Below are positions 45,485 to 50,642 of a stretch of DNA of 64,000 nt, in pieces. Positions within the stretch are counted from its first letter, which is position 1, and the number at the start of each line of letters is the position of its first letter. The DNA is taken from NCBI GenBank assembly GCA_964247055.1, contig OZ176057.1, positions 3,534,001 through 3,598,000 of the forward strand. The letters are read 5' to 3'. This DNA comes from Paragordius varius. Taxonomy: Eukaryota; Animalia; Nematomorpha. The position numbers and the translations under genes are program-made. The notes under the pieces were generated by a model. The model searched no databases, was not told the DNA's origin, and was given only the letters and a program-made list of their open reading frames with translations.

Positions 45485-46478
45485 TCATACTTTTTTTCAT
45501 TTCAATATATACGGGTTTCGGGTCTTAAAATTAAATTTTTTTACAGTAAAATTTGTTTTTTTAAAGTTGATTGATTCTTTTTCAACCACACATTATATTT
45601 TCACAAACAGTTTAATATCTTAGTTTAAAGTTTTACCCTTAGTTACGATACTAAAACCTTTTATTTTTAATTATCGAATTTCTGCCTAATTACATTTTGA
45701 CCCAAACCTTGTATTTAAACCATGATGCATGTGTAAAATATTTTTATTTCTGATATAAAAAGGAGAATCTAATTACAATGTGATTTAATTTGCGTTTTTT
45801 TTTTCAATTTATCTGTACACCCCACACAATAATATAGCTATACCCACTTATTCACTACTCTATTATTTAAACACATATTTTTTCCATTTAAATCAAAAGT
45901 AGTTTATATAATTTAGTATCAATGGATATTATTTATATATATATATCAGATTTTTTAGTTTTTTAATATATTTACTAATAAATAAATAATTGAAAATCAT
46001 ATATACTACCAATGAGTCGGCTTATAAGGCGAAATTAAACAGATACTCGGGTGTTTTATCATAACATTTTGAGGTCATATAAAATCTGTGCTTCTGTTTA
46101 GACAAAAGTTATTAAGATATCTCATATTTGGTTTTAATATCAGAGTTAAGAATTGGGAGTAATAGATAACAGGTAAAATATGCAACAGAAAAGGTGAGAA
46201 GTCACAGAAAACTCGACAACCATGATGTAAAAAAAACTAAACACCTTTATATTATTTGGCTAAGCAATCAGCTATGGAAAGAATGACATCGATTTTTATA
46301 TTAATATAAACAGTAATTAAAATAACGCCATACAAAATTGAAATAGACGCAAATTATACAAAAAAAGTCTGCTAAGCTTTGATTTAAAAACATGAGAATA
46401 TCATACCATTTTGATAATGATTGACAAGTGTTAGAAATACAATTTATTTTTACATATTAAATTTTATTAAAAAATTGG

Positions 46479-47831
46479 TCAACATGGCTGACAACCGCAT
46501 TTATCAATGACTAAAATCTGTTTTGTTATATAAATTATGTCTTTTATATCAATGGAGGTTCTTTTTTCCCTGGTTTGTGTAGGAACCTGAGGAGTAGATT
46601 TTATAAAATGAGATGTATGAGGTAATGTGGAATTATCATTCCGCTTTATACGATTAACTGTAATGTTGGGTTTAATAATTTTATAATCATTTCTTGATTT
46701 TTCCCCTTCAGTTTTCTTATTATCAACTTGAGGTGAAATATTCCTATTGGGTTGATCATATCTAACTTTGTTTGCACGTCCCGAATTAAATTGTGAAATA
46801 CCTAATTTATAGAGGAAATTAATTAAATTGCTATTATTACGGCTATTGTGGATGTGAATGTTGGTCATTGTGTGCTGTTTGTCAAAAATTTTATTCATAA
46901 ATCCATTTTTAGAATAATTTAAATTAGTTCTAGTAGATTCCTTGACTTCTTTAAAAAATTGAGCATCCTGCCCTAACTTTTTGATTAGAATTTTTCGACA
47001 CTTGATGCGAATAACCTCGTAATGTGCTCTAACAGGTCCACATGAAGAACAAAAACGAACTTTTGCCAGCATATCACTAGTTTGGTGTGAGCTAGGTTTG
47101 GCAGAATCTATATCTCTTCGTTTGGTAAAATGCGTATATTTATTGAGTTTAACATGTGGAGTAGCTGGAGAATCTTTTAAAATTTTATTCTTTTGTCGAA
47201 AGTTGTCATTTGAGTTGGTTGTAATTTGCTCATTTATATTGGCTTGTGATTGATAAAATTTGGATTTATAAGCAGATGATTTCGTTCGCACATCTGAATG
47301 GTGAGGTGGATAAACGAAACTATGACAAGCTCCAAAACAAAAATTATTTTGAATAGTGATTGGTGTCGTACACTTGTATCGGTACATGAAGCTCAATGAT
47401 GATGAAAATAATTCTTTGTCAAAGGAATAGATATTTGCATTATCCTTTAAATGATTAAGTTGATTATTAGGGTCAATATTAGAATGATCAAATTGGAAAC
47501 TTTCGAGTTCCTCCAAAACGCCATTCTCTGCTATATCAATAGTTTGATTAAACGGAACTTGTTTACATTTTTCTCTCCACCCAAATAATTCAGGGAACAG
47601 GGGAACCCGATACTGTTCAGGATATTTTTTGAAAATGCCATAAAGTTTATTCATCTCCTCGGGACTTTTTAAATCATGTTTTTCCGTGTTGCCTTCAGGA
47701 TTGTTATCAGGTGTATAAAGGTTGTAATTTTTTAAAGAGTATTGCATTTCTCCATAGAGGTCATATATGATTATCAAATTTATTAAGGAAACATAATGCA
47801 TATTGGAATTCCAATGGCTAAATTTAACCAT
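46479..47831 (-). CDS. DAN/NBL1/Gremlin-family cystine-knot protein (BMP antagonist-like) with three large insertions, single 450-aa ORF
   Basis: CKQVPFNQTI...CTTPITIQNNFCFGACHSFVYP...CSSCGP.....VIRIKC...ILVIDKCGCQPC parallels NBL1 (C..K.ITQ.V...C....IQN..C.GQC.S...P...CDSC.P......VTLEC...KI..CSCQAC). Hydrophobic N-terminal segment MHYVSLINLIIIYDLYG. Confidence 0.8.
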   Translation of the reverse strand: MVKFSHWNSNMHYVSLINLIIIYDLYGEMQYSLKNYNLYTPDNNPEGNTEKHDLKSPEEMNKLYGIFKKYPEQYRVPLFPELFGWREKCKQVPFNQTIDIAENGVLEELESFQFDHSNIDPNNQLNHLKDNANIYSFDKELFSSSLSFMYRYKCTTPITIQNNFCFGACHSFVYPPHHSDVRTKSSAYKSKFYQSQANINEQITTNSNDNFRQKNKILKDSPATPHVKLNKYTHFTKRRDIDSAKPSSHQTSDMLAKVRFCSSCGPVRAHYEVIRIKCRKILIKKLGQDAQFFKEVKESTRTNLNYSKNGFMNKIFDKQHTMTNIHIHNSRNNSNLINFLYKLGISQFNSGRANKVRYDQPNRNISPQVDNKKTEGEKSRNDYKIIKPNITVNRIKRNDNSTLPHTSHFIKSTPQVPTQTREKRTSIDIKDIIYITKQILVIDKCGCQPC

Positions 47832-49290
47832 TTAAACTTATATTAGCTTACAATTTTATGAAATATTACTTATTTTTAATCATTGGATATGTTTTTTTAC
47901 TATTACATATATAATTTTCCACCTCTCTCATAAAATTCATGTAATGAAACAATGGTATTTACATTTCAAAAAATAAACTAAAAAAAATTTATAAACATCA
48001 GACAACTTTTACAAAACATCATTTATCAAATGTTAAAATACATTTATTTTATACAACTTCGCATAAGTGTTAAATTTGATAAAACATTATTTTTTTAAAA
48101 AGAAAGTTCATTTTTATGATTTGTAGCTAACAGAGTTCATAAATACTACTTTGATTTATTCCATAATGGGAGGAGTTAATACTAACATGCATGAAAATGA
48201 AATATTATTGGTTAAGATATGTCTTTTATTTGGTGCAATGGAGAAAATATTATATAATGAATTTTTTAAACTCGCTTGAATACAATTGAATTTTCCCTTT
48301 GTGCATATTTGGAAAGCTAACAATATTCTACTGTTATATTTTTACAACACATTTAGCAGCGTTGATTAATGATTTTTACCAAAGTACACTTAGAAGTTGG
48401 GTGGCCTTAAATTGCAAAGATATACGAAATAAGATAAAAATATATGCTTAAAAAAATTATACAGGAAATGTTAATAAAAGCAAGAAAATTTGTATATCGT
48501 TATTTTATTGCCAACTTTATAAGATGGCCATAAATGTATTTAGGTTAAACAACAGTAAGGCTACAGGAAAAATCTAACTTTTTAGTACAGTTGCAATTTT
48601 CAAAGTAGAACCCTGTCACTCTTTTACAATCATGTTTTTAAATTCTTAAAATAGTTTTCAATATGATGTTAAGACACCCTCAATCCATATATCACAATCG
48701 GGTATTTAATAATTTAAATCATCTGGATATATTAAAAATTTAAGAGCTTAAAAAAACATGAATGGCAATATAAAATTATTTTTTTCTTATCCAAATAAAT
48801 CAGTTAACGTATTTTGTTTTATAGTTTTACCTTTTTAAAGATCCATGTAAAAAATAGGCATTTTGTTCAAATTAACATATTTTTCAAATTTTTTAGTCAA
48901 AATTTCATATGACCTAAATGTATTAAACAGCAAGGTTATTCTTAAAAATATATAATTGTTTACAATAAACACAAAATTAATAAAAAAATTTATTTTAAAA
49001 TTTATACATAAAATTAAAATTTTATACCATAAATTTTATTATAATATCACGTATTCGTATATTCGAAGTGATTCCATATACACTGTGTACTTATAGATAA
49101 ATGAATCTTGATTCATATGAAGTTGCTGGTTTTGAGGCTAATGAATAATTTATGAACACATTTGTGATAACTGCTCCATATCGGAAAATCGCAAAGTTAG
49201 TTCTCAATATCCCCAAAAAATTTTTCATTGATCAATAATAACAATTTGATTCTTTTAGAATTTTATCTATTTTACAAAATGAATAAATAT

Positions 49291-50642
49291 TTATTTTTTT
49301 GAATCCATATTATCTAAACTAATAACATTGGTGTCTTTATCGATATCAATTAAATCTTTGTGGGCTTCATCGGTGTTTTTTACGTTTTTATCCATTTTTT
49401 TCATTTTTTCAACACTCTTTTGCTGTTTGAAATCATTTTTGCCAGATTTCAATGCGTGGACTTTTCTTTCATTCATTAATGTATTACTGTTTTTATCTGT
49501 AAAATTTGATAATATAACTTGTTTTGTATATTAATATTCATTTAAAATGTTTAATAATGTACAAATATGATTAAAGTAGTTAGTAAACGGCTAAATGTTG
49601 TCAATTTTGAAAAGCGTACTTTATAAAACATTATGGTCATGATCTTATATATTAAATATTACTTTAATTTTAAAACGTGTTTTGGGAATGAAATATATAT
49701 TTGTTAAATATTTATCCAAATCTAAATGACTCAATTTGGTTAGAATAAAAGTTTTAAGATACGTCAACAACCTTTCATACCATTTCGAGAGATTTCACTT
49801 TTCTTATTAACCATATCGGTTTCAATTCTATCCGTGTCAGTTTGGGGTTCATTCGATTCTTCAACAATTGATTCCCAATCAGGAAATGAATCCCAGACGT
49901 CGGGTGTCGCAATTTCCTTTTTATGGTTATAAAAACCTCTTTTTAAGGCACCACTTTTGACATTTTTATTTGTGAGCACCTGATTTCTTTTCTTTTGTTG
50001 ACGTTGATTGGAAATGGAGGAATCATGTTGATAATACTTCTCATCAAGGTTAGATAAGTCTCGATTAAATTTTTGGGCTAACTGACTCGATTTTTGGCGC
50101 AAGAAATTAAGGAACTCCTCAAACAAAACATGCTCTATATTGTGTAAATGTTGTTTTTGTTGTTCTACCATATTTTGATCATTTACATTTTGTATTGATT
50201 GCTTATTTGCCAGTAAATTTTGATCAGTTTCAGCCAAATTATTTCCTTGGTCATTGTAATAAAAATCAAAAGCTCTTTTTTGTGTATCAAAACTGTCCTT
50301 ATCGGCATAATCGGCAAAAACAGCTTTTTTGCCCTGTTCAAATGCACTCCTTTGATCCATATAACTTCTCCGGTTTCTCAAATAAGTACTGCCATCTAAA
50401 GCTGAATCTGTGAAATAAAATATTTTCTCCTTTAACATTATAAAAAAAACCTATTTTGTAGCAACATATTAATAAATTTTTATACAAATAAAGTAAAAAC
50501 CGCGGTTAGAGTTATCAATGAATGAGGGGAATAGGTGACGTTTTTTTCGATAATTTAGGGCCTGGCCACAATATATATGCATAATAAAAAAACAAAAACA
50601 TATAATTATTAATTGTAGTTTTGATGTTATCATAAATAGCAT
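49291..50642 (-). CDS. Prohormone/neuropeptide-precursor-like secreted protein, 324 aa; exons 50642-50501, 50407-49781, 49496-49291
   Basis: MLFMITSKLQLIIICFCFFIMHIYCGQALNY-RKKR-HLFPSFIDNSNR|DSALDGSTYL-RNRR-SYMDQRSAFEQ-GKK-AVFADYADKDSFDTQ-KR-AFDFYY... Signal peptide, several convertase sites and two consistent phase-1 introns. Confidence 0.78.

What the first reader, a model, noticed from the sequence alone, without database searches (positions are those of the whole stretch)
46479..47831. DAN-family cystine knot split by three large insertions carrying convertase sites
Seen: Cys spacing is C-64-C-10-C-3-C-91-C-2-C-13-C-166-C-1-C-2-C, whereas DAN/Gremlin proteins have roughly 13, 14-18 and 15-19 residues in the three expanded intervals. 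The constrained spacings (CxGxC, CxxC, C-13-C, CxC) are intact, so selection keeps the knot. Insert 2 contains TKRR, and insert 3 contains RIKR and REKR, the latter 20 residues before the final Cys cluster. Established: these loops form the fingers that bind BMP, and R-X-K-R is cut by furin. Inference: a proinsulin-like precursor in which linker peptides are removed to give a multi-chain disulfide-held antagonist, or protease-gated BMP inhibition. The inserts could instead be unrecognised in-frame introns.
Basis: partly seen in the sequence, partly recalled or inferred. Interest (0 to 1): 0.76.

Follow-up and report, generated by a model that had tools for sequence, protein, structure and literature searches.

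The report
Hairworm DAN cystine-knot with giant loops
This is a real, intron-free gene of a horsehair-worm relative for a secreted BMP-antagonist-type (DAN family) cystine-knot protein whose three surface loops have grown to 64, 91 and 166 residues. The same layout occurs in the hairworm Gordionus, but the proposed protease-cutting sites are not conserved there.

Summary
The ORF at 46479-47831 (minus strand, 450 aa) has exactly the reported Cys spacing and basic motifs, and it passes Pfam's DAN threshold.

The inserts are translated sequence, not introns:
- They have no in-frame stops, against 3-29 stops in the other frames. The chance of staying open is about 7e-3, 9e-4 and 3e-6 for the three inserts.
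- They show codon-position bias like the core.
- The listed haplotype indels inside the ORF all preserve the frame.
- The only relative found among 1.8 billion representative proteins, a 460-aa Gordionus protein, carries large inserts at the same three places inside one uninterrupted exon.

A two-sequence AlphaFold model gives moderate confidence (pLDDT 50-70) only for the four core strands. These assemble into a fold that best matches NBL1 and Gremlin-1.

Other cystine-knot genes of this genome (an NBL1-like gene, BMP2/4, a glycoprotein-hormone-like gene) are not expanded.

Inserts 1 and 2 share no detectable sequence between the two worms. Insert 3 keeps one short helix motif. RIKR and REKR are absent from Gordionus, so the proinsulin-like or protease-gated reading is not supported, though not excluded.

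No RNA data were available. Function as a BMP or Wnt modulator is inferred.

This is a new variant of a known family and of moderate interest.

The parts
46479..47831 (-). Complete single-exon ORF, 450 aa plus stop. A DAN-family cystine-knot protein with three expanded loops.
   Evidence: Single copy in the genome.
47763..47795 (-). Probable signal-peptide hydrophobic core, aa 13-23 (YVSLINLIIIY). It resembles Gordionus SILLLIIIYYG.
   Evidence: It is the most hydrophobic 11-mer of the whole protein in both species. No signal-peptide predictor was available.
47568..47705 (-). Conserved pre-knot N-terminal region, aa 43-88 (…FKKYP…LFPELFGWREK).
   Evidence: Significantly similar to Gordionus (z 8.2); 37% identity.
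47529..47567 (-). Strand beta-1 with the first knot Cys (C89), aa 89-101. It includes the sequon NQT.
   Evidence: AF2 strand 90-98 with pLDDT above 50; 50% identity to Gordionus.
47388..47528 (-). Insert 1 at the tip of finger 1, aa 102-148, acidic (net charge -7). The C89-C154 interval is 64 residues, against 13 in canonical proteins and 28 in Gordionus.
   Evidence: No similarity to Gordionus (z 0.2). pLDDT below 50. An in-frame +ATT haplotype indel lies at 47462.
47304..47387 (-). Strand beta-2 plus CxGxC (C154, C165-FGA-C169) plus SFVYP, aa 149-176. This is the best Pfam DAN and Gremlin-matching stretch.
   Evidence: AF2 strands 148-166.
47064..47303 (-). Insert 2 in the wrist (loop 2), aa 177-256, net charge +7. 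The C169-C261 interval is 91 residues, against about 18 canonical and 107 in Gordionus.
   Evidence: No similarity to Gordionus (z -0.1). Frame-preserving haplotype indels at 47151/47154. Codon-position chi-square p 0.0055.
47115..47123 (-). KRR tribasic site (aa 237-239) in insert 2. Gordionus has KYKR in a roughly similar position.
   Evidence: The conservation is not statistically supported.
46986..47063 (-). Strand beta-3 with C261-SS-C264 and C278 (C-13-C), aa 257-282.
   Evidence: AF2 strand 263-284 with pLDDT 62-65.
46542..46985 (-). Insert 3 at the tip of finger 2, aa 283-430, net charge +16, with four N-glycosylation sequons. The C278-C445 interval is 166 residues, against about 17 canonical and 137 in Gordionus.
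   Evidence: Codon-position chi-square p 2.9e-5. No Pfam or Atlas match.
46794..46847 (-). Conserved motif inside insert 3, aa 329-346 (NSRNNSNLINFLYKLGIS; Gordionus …DNNLVNFLNKYGIN). A short helix is predicted here.
   Evidence: 50% identity. It drives the only significant insert similarity (P 0.018). AF2 helix 334-342.
46641..46652 (-). RIKR (aa 394-397), a furin-type motif not conserved in Gordionus.
46560..46571 (-). REKR (aa 421-424), a furin-type motif not conserved in Gordionus.
46482..46541 (-). Strand beta-4 plus the terminal C445-G-C447-QP-C450, aa 431-450. This completes an NBL1-like set of 10 Cys.
   Evidence: 50% identity to Gordionus. AF2 strand 432-448 with pLDDT 62-63. NBL1 has five intramolecular disulfides (PMC7473711).
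46443..46468 (-). Two AATAAA polyadenylation-type hexamers, 11 and 31 nt after the stop codon.
   Evidence: Read directly from the sequence. Not verified on RNA.

Best explanation
This is a genuine, single-exon, single-copy gene of a horsehair-worm relative. It encodes a secreted DAN-family (Gremlin/NBL1-like) cystine-knot protein.

The four beta-strands and all knot cysteines are kept. Long, translated and probably disordered N/K/S/T-rich extensions have grown out of the three places where the fold tolerates them: the tip of finger 1, the wrist loop and the tip of finger 2. The expansions predate the split from Gordionus. They are kept as open reading frame but drift freely in sequence and length, apart from one short helix motif in insert 3.

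The most likely function is inferred, not shown. The knot core traps a BMP-type ligand, and the genome has a BMP2/4 ortholog and at least four other TGF-beta loci. The glycosylated, strongly basic finger-2 and wrist extensions would act as spacers or as a matrix/heparan-sulfate tether, an exaggeration of the basic finger-2 heparin site of Gremlin and sclerostin. They would not be linkers that are cut out.
For: Shown:
- Pfam DAN is above threshold in both species (34.4 and 25.1 bits against 22).
- All ten best ESM Atlas feature hits are DAN-family clusters (score 0.84, a lead only).
- With a two-row alignment, the AF2 model reaches pLDDT 50-70 only in aa 87-100, 151-167, 262-282 and 430-450.
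- That model's best matches among 48,161 chains are NBL1 4x1j_B (Z 7.4, rmsd 3.0 A, 86 aa, 26% identity) and Gremlin-1 5aej_A (Z 7.3, rmsd 2.4 A, 84 aa, 29% identity). The first 36 rows are all cystine-knot growth-factor folds.

The inserts are coding:
- There are 0 in-frame stops, against 3-29 in the other frames. The chance of staying open is 7e-3, 9e-4 and 2.6e-6.
- Codon-position bias has the same third-position T excess as the core (p 0.037, 0.0055 and 2.9e-5).
- The listed haplotype indels inside the ORF are all multiples of three, whereas all but one of those in the flanks are single-base changes.
- There is no tandem repeat and no other genomic copy.

Ortholog:
- The sole hit among 1.84 billion representatives is Gordionus XP_065318940.1 (E 4.8e-7; pairwise BLASTP 1e-18).
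- Its spacing is 28-9-3-107-2-13-137-1-2, all within one exon covering aa 8-460.

The expansion is gene-specific. In the same genome the NBL1-like L001, the BMP2/4 gene L003 and the glycoprotein-hormone-like L010 are unexpanded.

Support for the tether idea:
- Insert 3 has net charge +16 and insert 2 has +7.
- DAN-family antagonists bind heparin through finger 2 and loop 2 (PMC6154108).
- The N-terminal hydrophobic segment is the most hydrophobic 11-mer in both proteins.
Against: - There is no transcript evidence at all. Every run that holds the locus behaves as DNA, and the one with ORF-centred coverage carries a Hi-C ligation junction.
- The AF2 core confidence is only 50-70 and Z is below 8, which the tool calls middling.
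- Ligand binding is untested. The complex prediction with the worm's own BMP2/4 gave no answer.
- The Ca-Cb interval is not canonical in either species.
- Only two species are known, so 'conserved architecture' rests on a single comparison.
- The heparan-sulfate tether role is by analogy only.
- The excess of R-x-[KR]-R motifs (2 observed against 0.13 expected, P 0.008) is not explained by this reading except as a by-product of basic composition.
Confidence: 0.6

Rival explanations
1. Convertase-processed precursor. Furin/PC-type enzymes cut at KRR (insert 2) and at RIKR/REKR (insert 3). This would yield a two- or three-chain molecule held together by disulfides, or BMP inhibition that is switched on or off by cleavage.
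For: - R-x-[KR]-R occurs twice against 0.13 expected (P 0.008).
- The genome encodes at least two P-domain convertases and uses RSKR ahead of the mature domain of its own BMP2/4.
- The knot topology would keep the cut chains together (Ca-Cf, Cb-Cg, Cc-Ch, Cd-Ci as in sclerostin; established knowledge).
- Gordionus has KYKR in insert 2, near the target's KRR.
- A weak internal similarity aligns KRR-D with RIKR-N (P about 0.015).
Against: - RIKR and REKR have no counterpart in Gordionus.
- The insert-2 dibasic match is not robust. Global alignment does not pair the sites, the insert-2 interiors have z of about 0, and 32% of shuffles give an aligned dibasic pair.
- The sites do not bracket the inserts, so most of each insert would stay attached, unlike a C-peptide.
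- Basic runs in finger 2 are normal in uncleaved family members (PMC6154108).
Confidence: 0.12
2. It has the same fold but is not a BMP antagonist. It would act as a Wnt/LRP modulator (like sclerostin or SOSTDC1), as a hormone-like LGR ligand (bursicon, GPA2/GPB5 or norrin type), or as a parasite-secreted factor aimed at the insect host.
For: - Fold rows within one Z unit of the top include norrin, C. elegans GPA2/GPB5 and SOST.
- DAN members act outside BMP signalling (PMC7473711).
- The top ESM Atlas hits are SOSTDC1 clusters.
- The conserved insert-3 motif contains N-L-I/V, which superficially resembles the NxI LRP-binding motif of sclerostin (from memory, a weak lead).
Against: - Pfam Cys_knot scores 15.7 bits, below its cut-off of 24, while DAN is above its own.
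- Bursicon's extra Cys (CxCC) is absent, since the protein has CSSC.
- The sequence-level best matches are Gremlin-1/2 and NBL1.
- NxI-like triplets are expected by chance in an N/I-rich protein.
Confidence: 0.2
3. The inserts are unrecognised in-frame introns (large ones, or the 22-33-nt introns reported for this genome), so the mature protein would be an ordinary small DAN protein.
For: There is no RNA data to exclude it directly. Earlier notes of this scan report very short introns in this genome.
Against: - The joint chance that three AT-rich introns of 192, 273 and 498 nt stay open in frame is about 1.6e-11.
- The same holds independently in Gordionus, where an RNA-seq-guided annotation keeps them in one exon.
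- The codon-position signal matches the core.
- Haplotype indels preserve the frame.
- The GT…AG candidates of 20-36 nt mostly fall on core, pre-knot or conserved-motif residues. The rest are frame-shifting, and at 7-12 residues each they could not account for the inserts.
Confidence: 0.02
4. It is a decaying or non-folding relic. The cysteines persist but the protein no longer forms a knot, and the ORF is kept by chance or for another reason.
For: AF2 confidence is low overall (mean pLDDT 35.6). Inserts 1 and 2 are unconstrained in sequence.
Against: - All 10 Cys, the CxGxC, CxxC, C-13-C and CxCxxC spacings and the four strands are conserved at 43-50% identity. A housekeeping fragment (DMXL C-terminus) is only 37% identical between the same two species.
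- The ORF is open in both species.
Confidence: 0.04

Closest known systems
[quoted passage not shown]
   Same: - Pfam DAN is above threshold.
- The beta-2/CxGxC/SFxxP stretch is Gremlin-like (TIxNxFCxGxCxSFxxP).
- The 10-Cys set with terminal CxCxxC is as in NBL1, which has five intramolecular disulfides.
- The CxxC and C-13-C spacings match.
- The predicted core superposes on NBL1 and Gremlin-1 at Z 7.3-7.4.
- Finger 2 is basic, as in Gremlin.
   Different: - The three loop intervals are 64, 91 and 166 residues instead of about 13, 18 and 17, so the protein is 450 aa rather than about 180.
- The subfamily (Gremlin or NBL1) is unresolved.
- Ligand binding and dimerisation are untested.
Gordionus sp. 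m RMFG-2023 uncharacterised protein LOC135926936 (XP_065318940.1 / CAK9299930.1)
   Same: It is the only relative found. It has the same architecture: a signal-like N-terminus, a conserved pre-knot region, four conserved strands, inserts at the same three positions, a CxCxxC end and a single long exon.
   Different: - Insert lengths are 28, 107 and 137, and there is an extra CxxC inside insert 3.
- It has no RIKR/REKR equivalents.
- The sequences of inserts 1 and 2 are unrelated.
- It has a longer N-terminal region.
- No shared neighbouring gene was found.
Sclerostin/SOSTDC1 loop 2
   Same: This is a DAN-family member in which the wrist loop (loop 2) is long and flexible and, together with finger 2, carries basic residues and functional binding motifs.
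   Different: Sclerostin's loop is about 24 residues, not 91. Sclerostin has 8 Cys. Any LRP5/6 binding here is pure conjecture.
Asn/Lys-rich non-globular inserts within conserved domains in AT-rich genomes (Plasmodium falciparum type; from general knowledge, not tested here)
   Same: The genome is AT-rich (25% GC). The inserts are enriched in N, K, S, T and Q, sit in surface loops of a conserved fold, and have poorly conserved sequence.
   Different: Here the expansion is gene-specific, since three other cystine-knot genes of the same genome are unexpanded. The inserts are not low-complexity by entropy (at most 1% of 12-mer windows fall below 2.2 bits). Their positions are conserved across two deeply diverged species.
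Proinsulin / TGF-beta proproteins (convertase-processed, disulfide-linked precursors)
   Same: Basic R-x-K-R motifs are present, convertases are encoded in the genome, and the disulfides could hold cut chains together.
   Different: The sites are not conserved in the ortholog and do not bracket the inserts. No prodomain-and-mature-domain logic is apparent.

Membership tests
DAN/CAN family (Pfam PF03045) | Match to the family profile above the curated gathering score | tested here: met
   34.4 bits against a cut-off of 22, E 2.4e-8. The Gordionus ortholog scores 25.1 bits.
DAN/CAN family (Pfam PF03045) | Eight-membered-ring cystine-knot cysteines: CxGxC, CxxC, C-13-C and CxC | tested here: met
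   C165-FGA-C169, C261-SS-C264, C264-13-C278 and C445-G-C447. All are conserved in Gordionus.
DAN/CAN family (Pfam PF03045) | Canonical loop lengths (about 13, 14-20 and 15-19 residues) giving a compact domain of about 90-110 aa | tested here: not met
   64, 91 and 166 residues here, and 28, 107 and 137 in Gordionus. This is the feature that makes it a variant.
DAN/CAN family (Pfam PF03045) | Two-finger growth-factor fold like solved DAN proteins | tested here: met
   The AF2 core (pLDDT 50-70) best matches NBL1 (Z 7.4) and Gremlin-1 (Z 7.3), and 36 consecutive rows are cystine-knot folds. Caveats: low model confidence, Z below 8, and Foldseek found nothing significant.
DAN/CAN family (Pfam PF03045) | Secreted (signal peptide) | tested here: inconclusive
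   The N-terminal segment is the most hydrophobic 11-mer in both orthologs (Kyte-Doolittle 2.08 and 2.33). No dedicated predictor was available.
DAN/CAN family (Pfam PF03045) | Binds and antagonises BMP-type ligands, usually as a non-covalent dimer through beta-2 | not testable with these tools
   The complex prediction with the worm's own BMP2/4 gave no answer. Candidate ligands exist in the genome.
Proprotein-convertase substrates (proinsulin-like precursors) | Basic cleavage motifs conserved in orthologs and flanking the excised segment | tested here: not met
   RIKR and REKR are absent in Gordionus. The insert-2 dibasic match is not above chance. The sites do not bracket the inserts.
Proprotein-convertase substrates (proinsulin-like precursors) | A convertase is available in the organism | tested here: met
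   There are two P_proprotein loci, and the organism's own BMP2/4 carries RSKR before the mature domain.
Proprotein-convertase substrates (proinsulin-like precursors) | Actual cleavage of the protein | not testable with these tools
   This needs expression and gel or mass-spectrometry analysis.
Bursicon / glycoprotein-hormone cystine-knot hormones | Bursicon's extra cysteine (CxCC) and 11-Cys pattern, or a Pfam Cys_knot match above threshold | tested here: not met
   The protein has CSSC, not CxCC, and 10 Cys. Cys_knot scores 15.7 bits against a cut-off of 24.

The most novel reading that the evidence does not exclude
The giant finger-tip and wrist extensions are functional modules of a hairworm-specific secreted DAN protein. 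Examples would be a protease- or matrix-gated BMP/Wnt modulator, or a parasite factor released into the insect host that uses the conserved insert-3 helix and basic tails to dock on host matrix or receptors. That would show that a cystine-knot growth-factor fold can carry 100-170-residue functional loops at all three of its extremities.
Probability: 0.1. Interest if true: 0.7.

Novelty: new variant of a known kind. Interest (0 to 1): 0.4.

Why it matters
DAN-family antagonists are compact proteins of about 100 residues in the knot domain. Their finger tips and wrist loop determine ligand, heparin and LRP binding.

This natural pair of orthologs keeps the knot while tolerating 28-166-residue extensions at all three extremities. 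It shows how much these positions can carry, which is useful for engineering cystine-knot scaffolds. It also gives a first look at BMP-pathway modulators in Nematomorpha, a barely studied parasitic phylum.

It is a practical warning as well. Ordinary sequence searches miss the gene: a 5.8-billion-protein word search found nothing, and Gordionus has it annotated only as 'uncharacterised'.

Tried and rejected
- The word-index protein search with the whole ORF found nothing. With the two-sequence profile it found only the Gordionus protein.
- AF2 on the single sequence was useless (mean pLDDT 31). Foldseek against the PDB found nothing at E <= 0.001.
- An alignment that added the paralog's exons as fragments (A2) was misaligned by MAFFT and was not used.
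- Complex prediction of aa 85-450 with two copies of the worm's BMP2/4 mature domain gave 'no answer' (ipSAE 0.00). This counts neither for nor against binding.
- RNA evidence is absent. No run on record as RNA holds the locus, and the RNA-labelled run that was laid on the locus (X6) gave nothing. X5, whose coverage looked ORF-centred, shows a GATC|AATC junction at a genomic GAATC site. It is therefore most likely a Hi-C DNA library, and the coverage pattern most likely reflects AT bias.
- Synteny was not shown. ORFs from 6 kb on either side of the Gordionus gene match nothing else in the window. The DMXL-like neighbour in Gordionus maps to another contig.
- Searches of insert 3 alone in Pfam and in the ESM Atlas gave nothing.
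- The mini-intron scan gave no credible candidate.
- The spliced model of the paralog L001 was never joined.
Full report
**What is there**

The window is 25% GC throughout and belongs to a 110.6-Mb, 44-contig assembly. The ORF at 46479-47831 on the minus strand is by far the longest stop-free frame in the 64 kb: 450 aa against 228 for the next. Its ten cysteines lie at 89, 154, 165, 169, 261, 264, 278, 445, 447 and 450. Pfam's DAN model is passed (34.4 bits, cut-off 22, E 2.4e-8). PDB sequence searches pick Gremlin-1/2 at the stretch ITIQNNFCFGACHSFVYP.

**Are the inserts translated?**

Four independent lines say yes.

- Stop codons. The window's stop density is 0.0745 per codon. The three inserts have 0 in-frame stops, against 3-29 in each other frame. 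The chances of staying open are 7e-3, 9e-4 and 2.6e-6.
- Codon-position bias. Nucleotide composition differs by codon position in each insert (p 0.037, 0.0055 and 2.9e-5). Third-position T is 0.39-0.45, against 0.49 in the core. Only 0.4% of random 444-nt window segments reach p < 0.001.
- Haplotype indels. Two DNA samples of the organism carry divergent haplotypes. Every listed indel inside the ORF preserves the frame: +AG with +T in one contig, +TAT, +ATT and -6. All but one of the listed indels just outside the ORF are single-base changes. Not all variants were listed by the tool.
- The ortholog. The only relative among 1.84 billion representative proteins is a 460-aa protein of the horsehair worm Gordionus sp. 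m RMFG-2023 (XP_065318940.1; E 4.8e-7; pairwise BLASTP 1e-18). Its gene has a tiny first exon, a 378-nt intron, and then one uninterrupted exon for residues 8-460. Its Cys spacing is 28-9-3-107-2-13-137-1-2. The same three intervals are therefore enlarged in a second, also AT-rich (26%) genome, whose annotation was guided by RNA-seq.

Earlier notes of this scan report 22-33-nt introns in this genome. I listed all GT[A/T]…AG candidates of 20-36 nt in the ORF. Most fall on core, pre-knot or conserved-motif residues, and the rest would shift the frame. None could account for the inserts. The intron rival is left at about 2%.

**Where the inserts sit**

Between the two worms, the four strand-plus-cysteine segments are 43-50% identical: 89-101, 149-176, 257-282 and 431-450. 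So is a pre-knot region (43-88; z 8.2). The interiors of inserts 1 and 2 show no similarity beyond composition (z about 0). Insert 3 keeps one motif, NSNLINFLYKLGIS against DNNLVNFLNKYGIN (P 0.018).

AlphaFold2 with the two-row alignment gives pLDDT 50-70 for exactly 87-100, 151-167, 262-282 and 430-450, all as strands, and below 50 everywhere else. An exhaustive structural comparison with low-confidence parts trimmed puts NBL1 first (4x1j_B: Z 7.4, rmsd 3.0 A, 86 residues, 26% identity). Gremlin-1 is second (5aej_A: Z 7.3, rmsd 2.4 A, 84 residues, 29% identity). Norrin, GPA2/GPB5, SOST, PDGF, GDNF and others follow, making 36 consecutive cystine-knot folds. Z below 8 is middling by the tool's own warning, and Foldseek found nothing significant. 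I therefore treat this as supporting rather than proving the fold.

Using the sclerostin disulfide map (established knowledge: Ca-Cf, Cb-Cg, Cc-Ch, Cd-Ci), the positions are as follows. Insert 1 is at the tip of finger 1. Insert 2 is the wrist, or 'loop 2'. Insert 3 is at the tip of finger 2. These are the three extremities of the fold, and the sheet faces are left free.

**Is it just an AT-rich genome inflating everything?**

No. The same genome has a second DAN gene (L001) that is clearly NBL1-like (E 3e-10 to 4x1j). It has canonical 13- and 20-residue intervals and ordinary introns. The genome also has a BMP2/4 ortholog whose mature domain matches the Pfam model end to end, and a glycoprotein-hormone-like knot of normal length. 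The inserts are not tandem repeats, are not repeated elsewhere in the genome, and are not low-complexity by entropy. The expansion is specific to this gene.

It is also old. A housekeeping fragment (the DMXL C-terminus) is only 37% identical between the two species.

**The convertase idea**

In favour:
- R-x-[KR]-R occurs twice against 0.13 expected (P 0.008).
- The genome has at least two P-domain convertases.
- It uses RSKR in its own BMP2/4.

Against:
- Gordionus has no counterpart of RIKR or REKR. Its single [KR]x[KR]R is KYKR in insert 2.
- MAFFT and BLAST place KYKR next to the target's KRR. A plain global alignment does not, the region has no significant similarity, and 32% of shuffles give an aligned dibasic pair.
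- The sites do not bracket the inserts.
- Basic clusters along finger 2 and loop 2 are the known heparin-binding surface of Gremlin and sclerostin (PMC6154108).

Insert 3 has net charge +16 and insert 2 has +7. I therefore read the basic motifs as part of an exaggerated basic, glycosylated tail, and give processing about 12%.

**Function**

Nothing was shown directly. By family membership, the most likely role is an extracellular trap for BMP-type ligands (PMC7473711 for the family). Candidate ligands are present in the genome. A complex prediction with the worm's own BMP2/4 returned no answer. Roles in Wnt/LRP or LGR signalling, or towards the insect host, cannot be excluded.

**RNA**

No run on record as RNA holds the locus. 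The run with ORF-centred coverage (X5) carries the junction …GATC|AATC… at a genomic GAATC site. That is the hallmark of a two-enzyme Hi-C library, so it is DNA (inference). Transcription of the gene in this species is therefore unverified.

**Verdict**

This is a real and unusual member of a known family: a DAN cystine knot with three giant, translated, mostly unconstrained loop extensions, shared by two deeply diverged hairworms. Its processing mechanism is not supported.

Noticed in passing
L001 (G000:C4:1127183-1130329), exons about 1329-1412, 1504-1635 and about 2206-2271: This is a second DAN-family gene, a clear NBL1 ortholog. Exon B matches NBL1 4x1j at E 3e-10. It has canonical Cys spacing, a CSCRNC end and ordinary introns of about 90 nt or more. 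It serves as an internal control showing that the expansion is gene-specific.
   Followed up: partly
L003 (G000:C6:8741064-8744369), ORFs 1495-2508 and 2624-3178, minus strand: This is a BMP2/4 (Dpp) ortholog, 39-52% identical (by local BLASTP) to vertebrate and arthropod BMP2/4. It has an RSKR convertase site before an unexpanded mature domain. The prodomain N-terminus lies in a separate ORF about 115 nt upstream. At least four further TGF_beta loci exist in the genome.
   Followed up: partly
window 47104-47108 (run X5): The X5 contigs end in …CCGATC joined to AATCTA… at a genomic GAATC site. This is an Arima-type Hi-C ligation junction, so this 'organism B' run is DNA of the same or a near-identical organism, not RNA.
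   Followed up: partly
window 45800-48600: There is high heterozygosity. Dozens of SNPs and several indels separate haplotype contigs in two DNA samples. The listed SNP density is about 1.0% in the ORF (6 synonymous, 8 mostly conservative replacements) against about 1.8% in the flanks. Only part of the variant list was shown by the tool.
   Followed up: partly
window 47085-47276 against 46608-46778 (aa 186-249 against 352-408): There is a weak internal similarity between insert 2 and insert 3 (P about 0.015 by shuffling). It aligns KRR-D…SH with RIKR-N…SH. It could be a partial ancient duplication or a composition effect.
   Followed up: partly
window 49764-50438, minus strand: A 224-aa Q/N/K-rich ORF lies 1.9 kb upstream on the same strand. 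It has no Pfam family and is not in the protein collection. It is the second-longest ORF in the window.
   Followed up: partly
L010 (G000:C7:3511650-3514958): This is a single glycoprotein-hormone-type Cys_knot locus (31.4 bits) inside a 260-aa open frame. Its knot domain is of normal length.
   Followed up: no
L011 (Gordionus OX940785.2:36102401-36116158) and L013 (G000:C1:7278305-7281547): In Gordionus the gene's neighbour is a 4357-aa DMXL/Rav1-like WD40 protein. Its counterpart in this genome lies on another contig and is only 37% identical over the C-terminal fragment. No synteny is shown, and the divergence between the two species is deep.
   Followed up: partly
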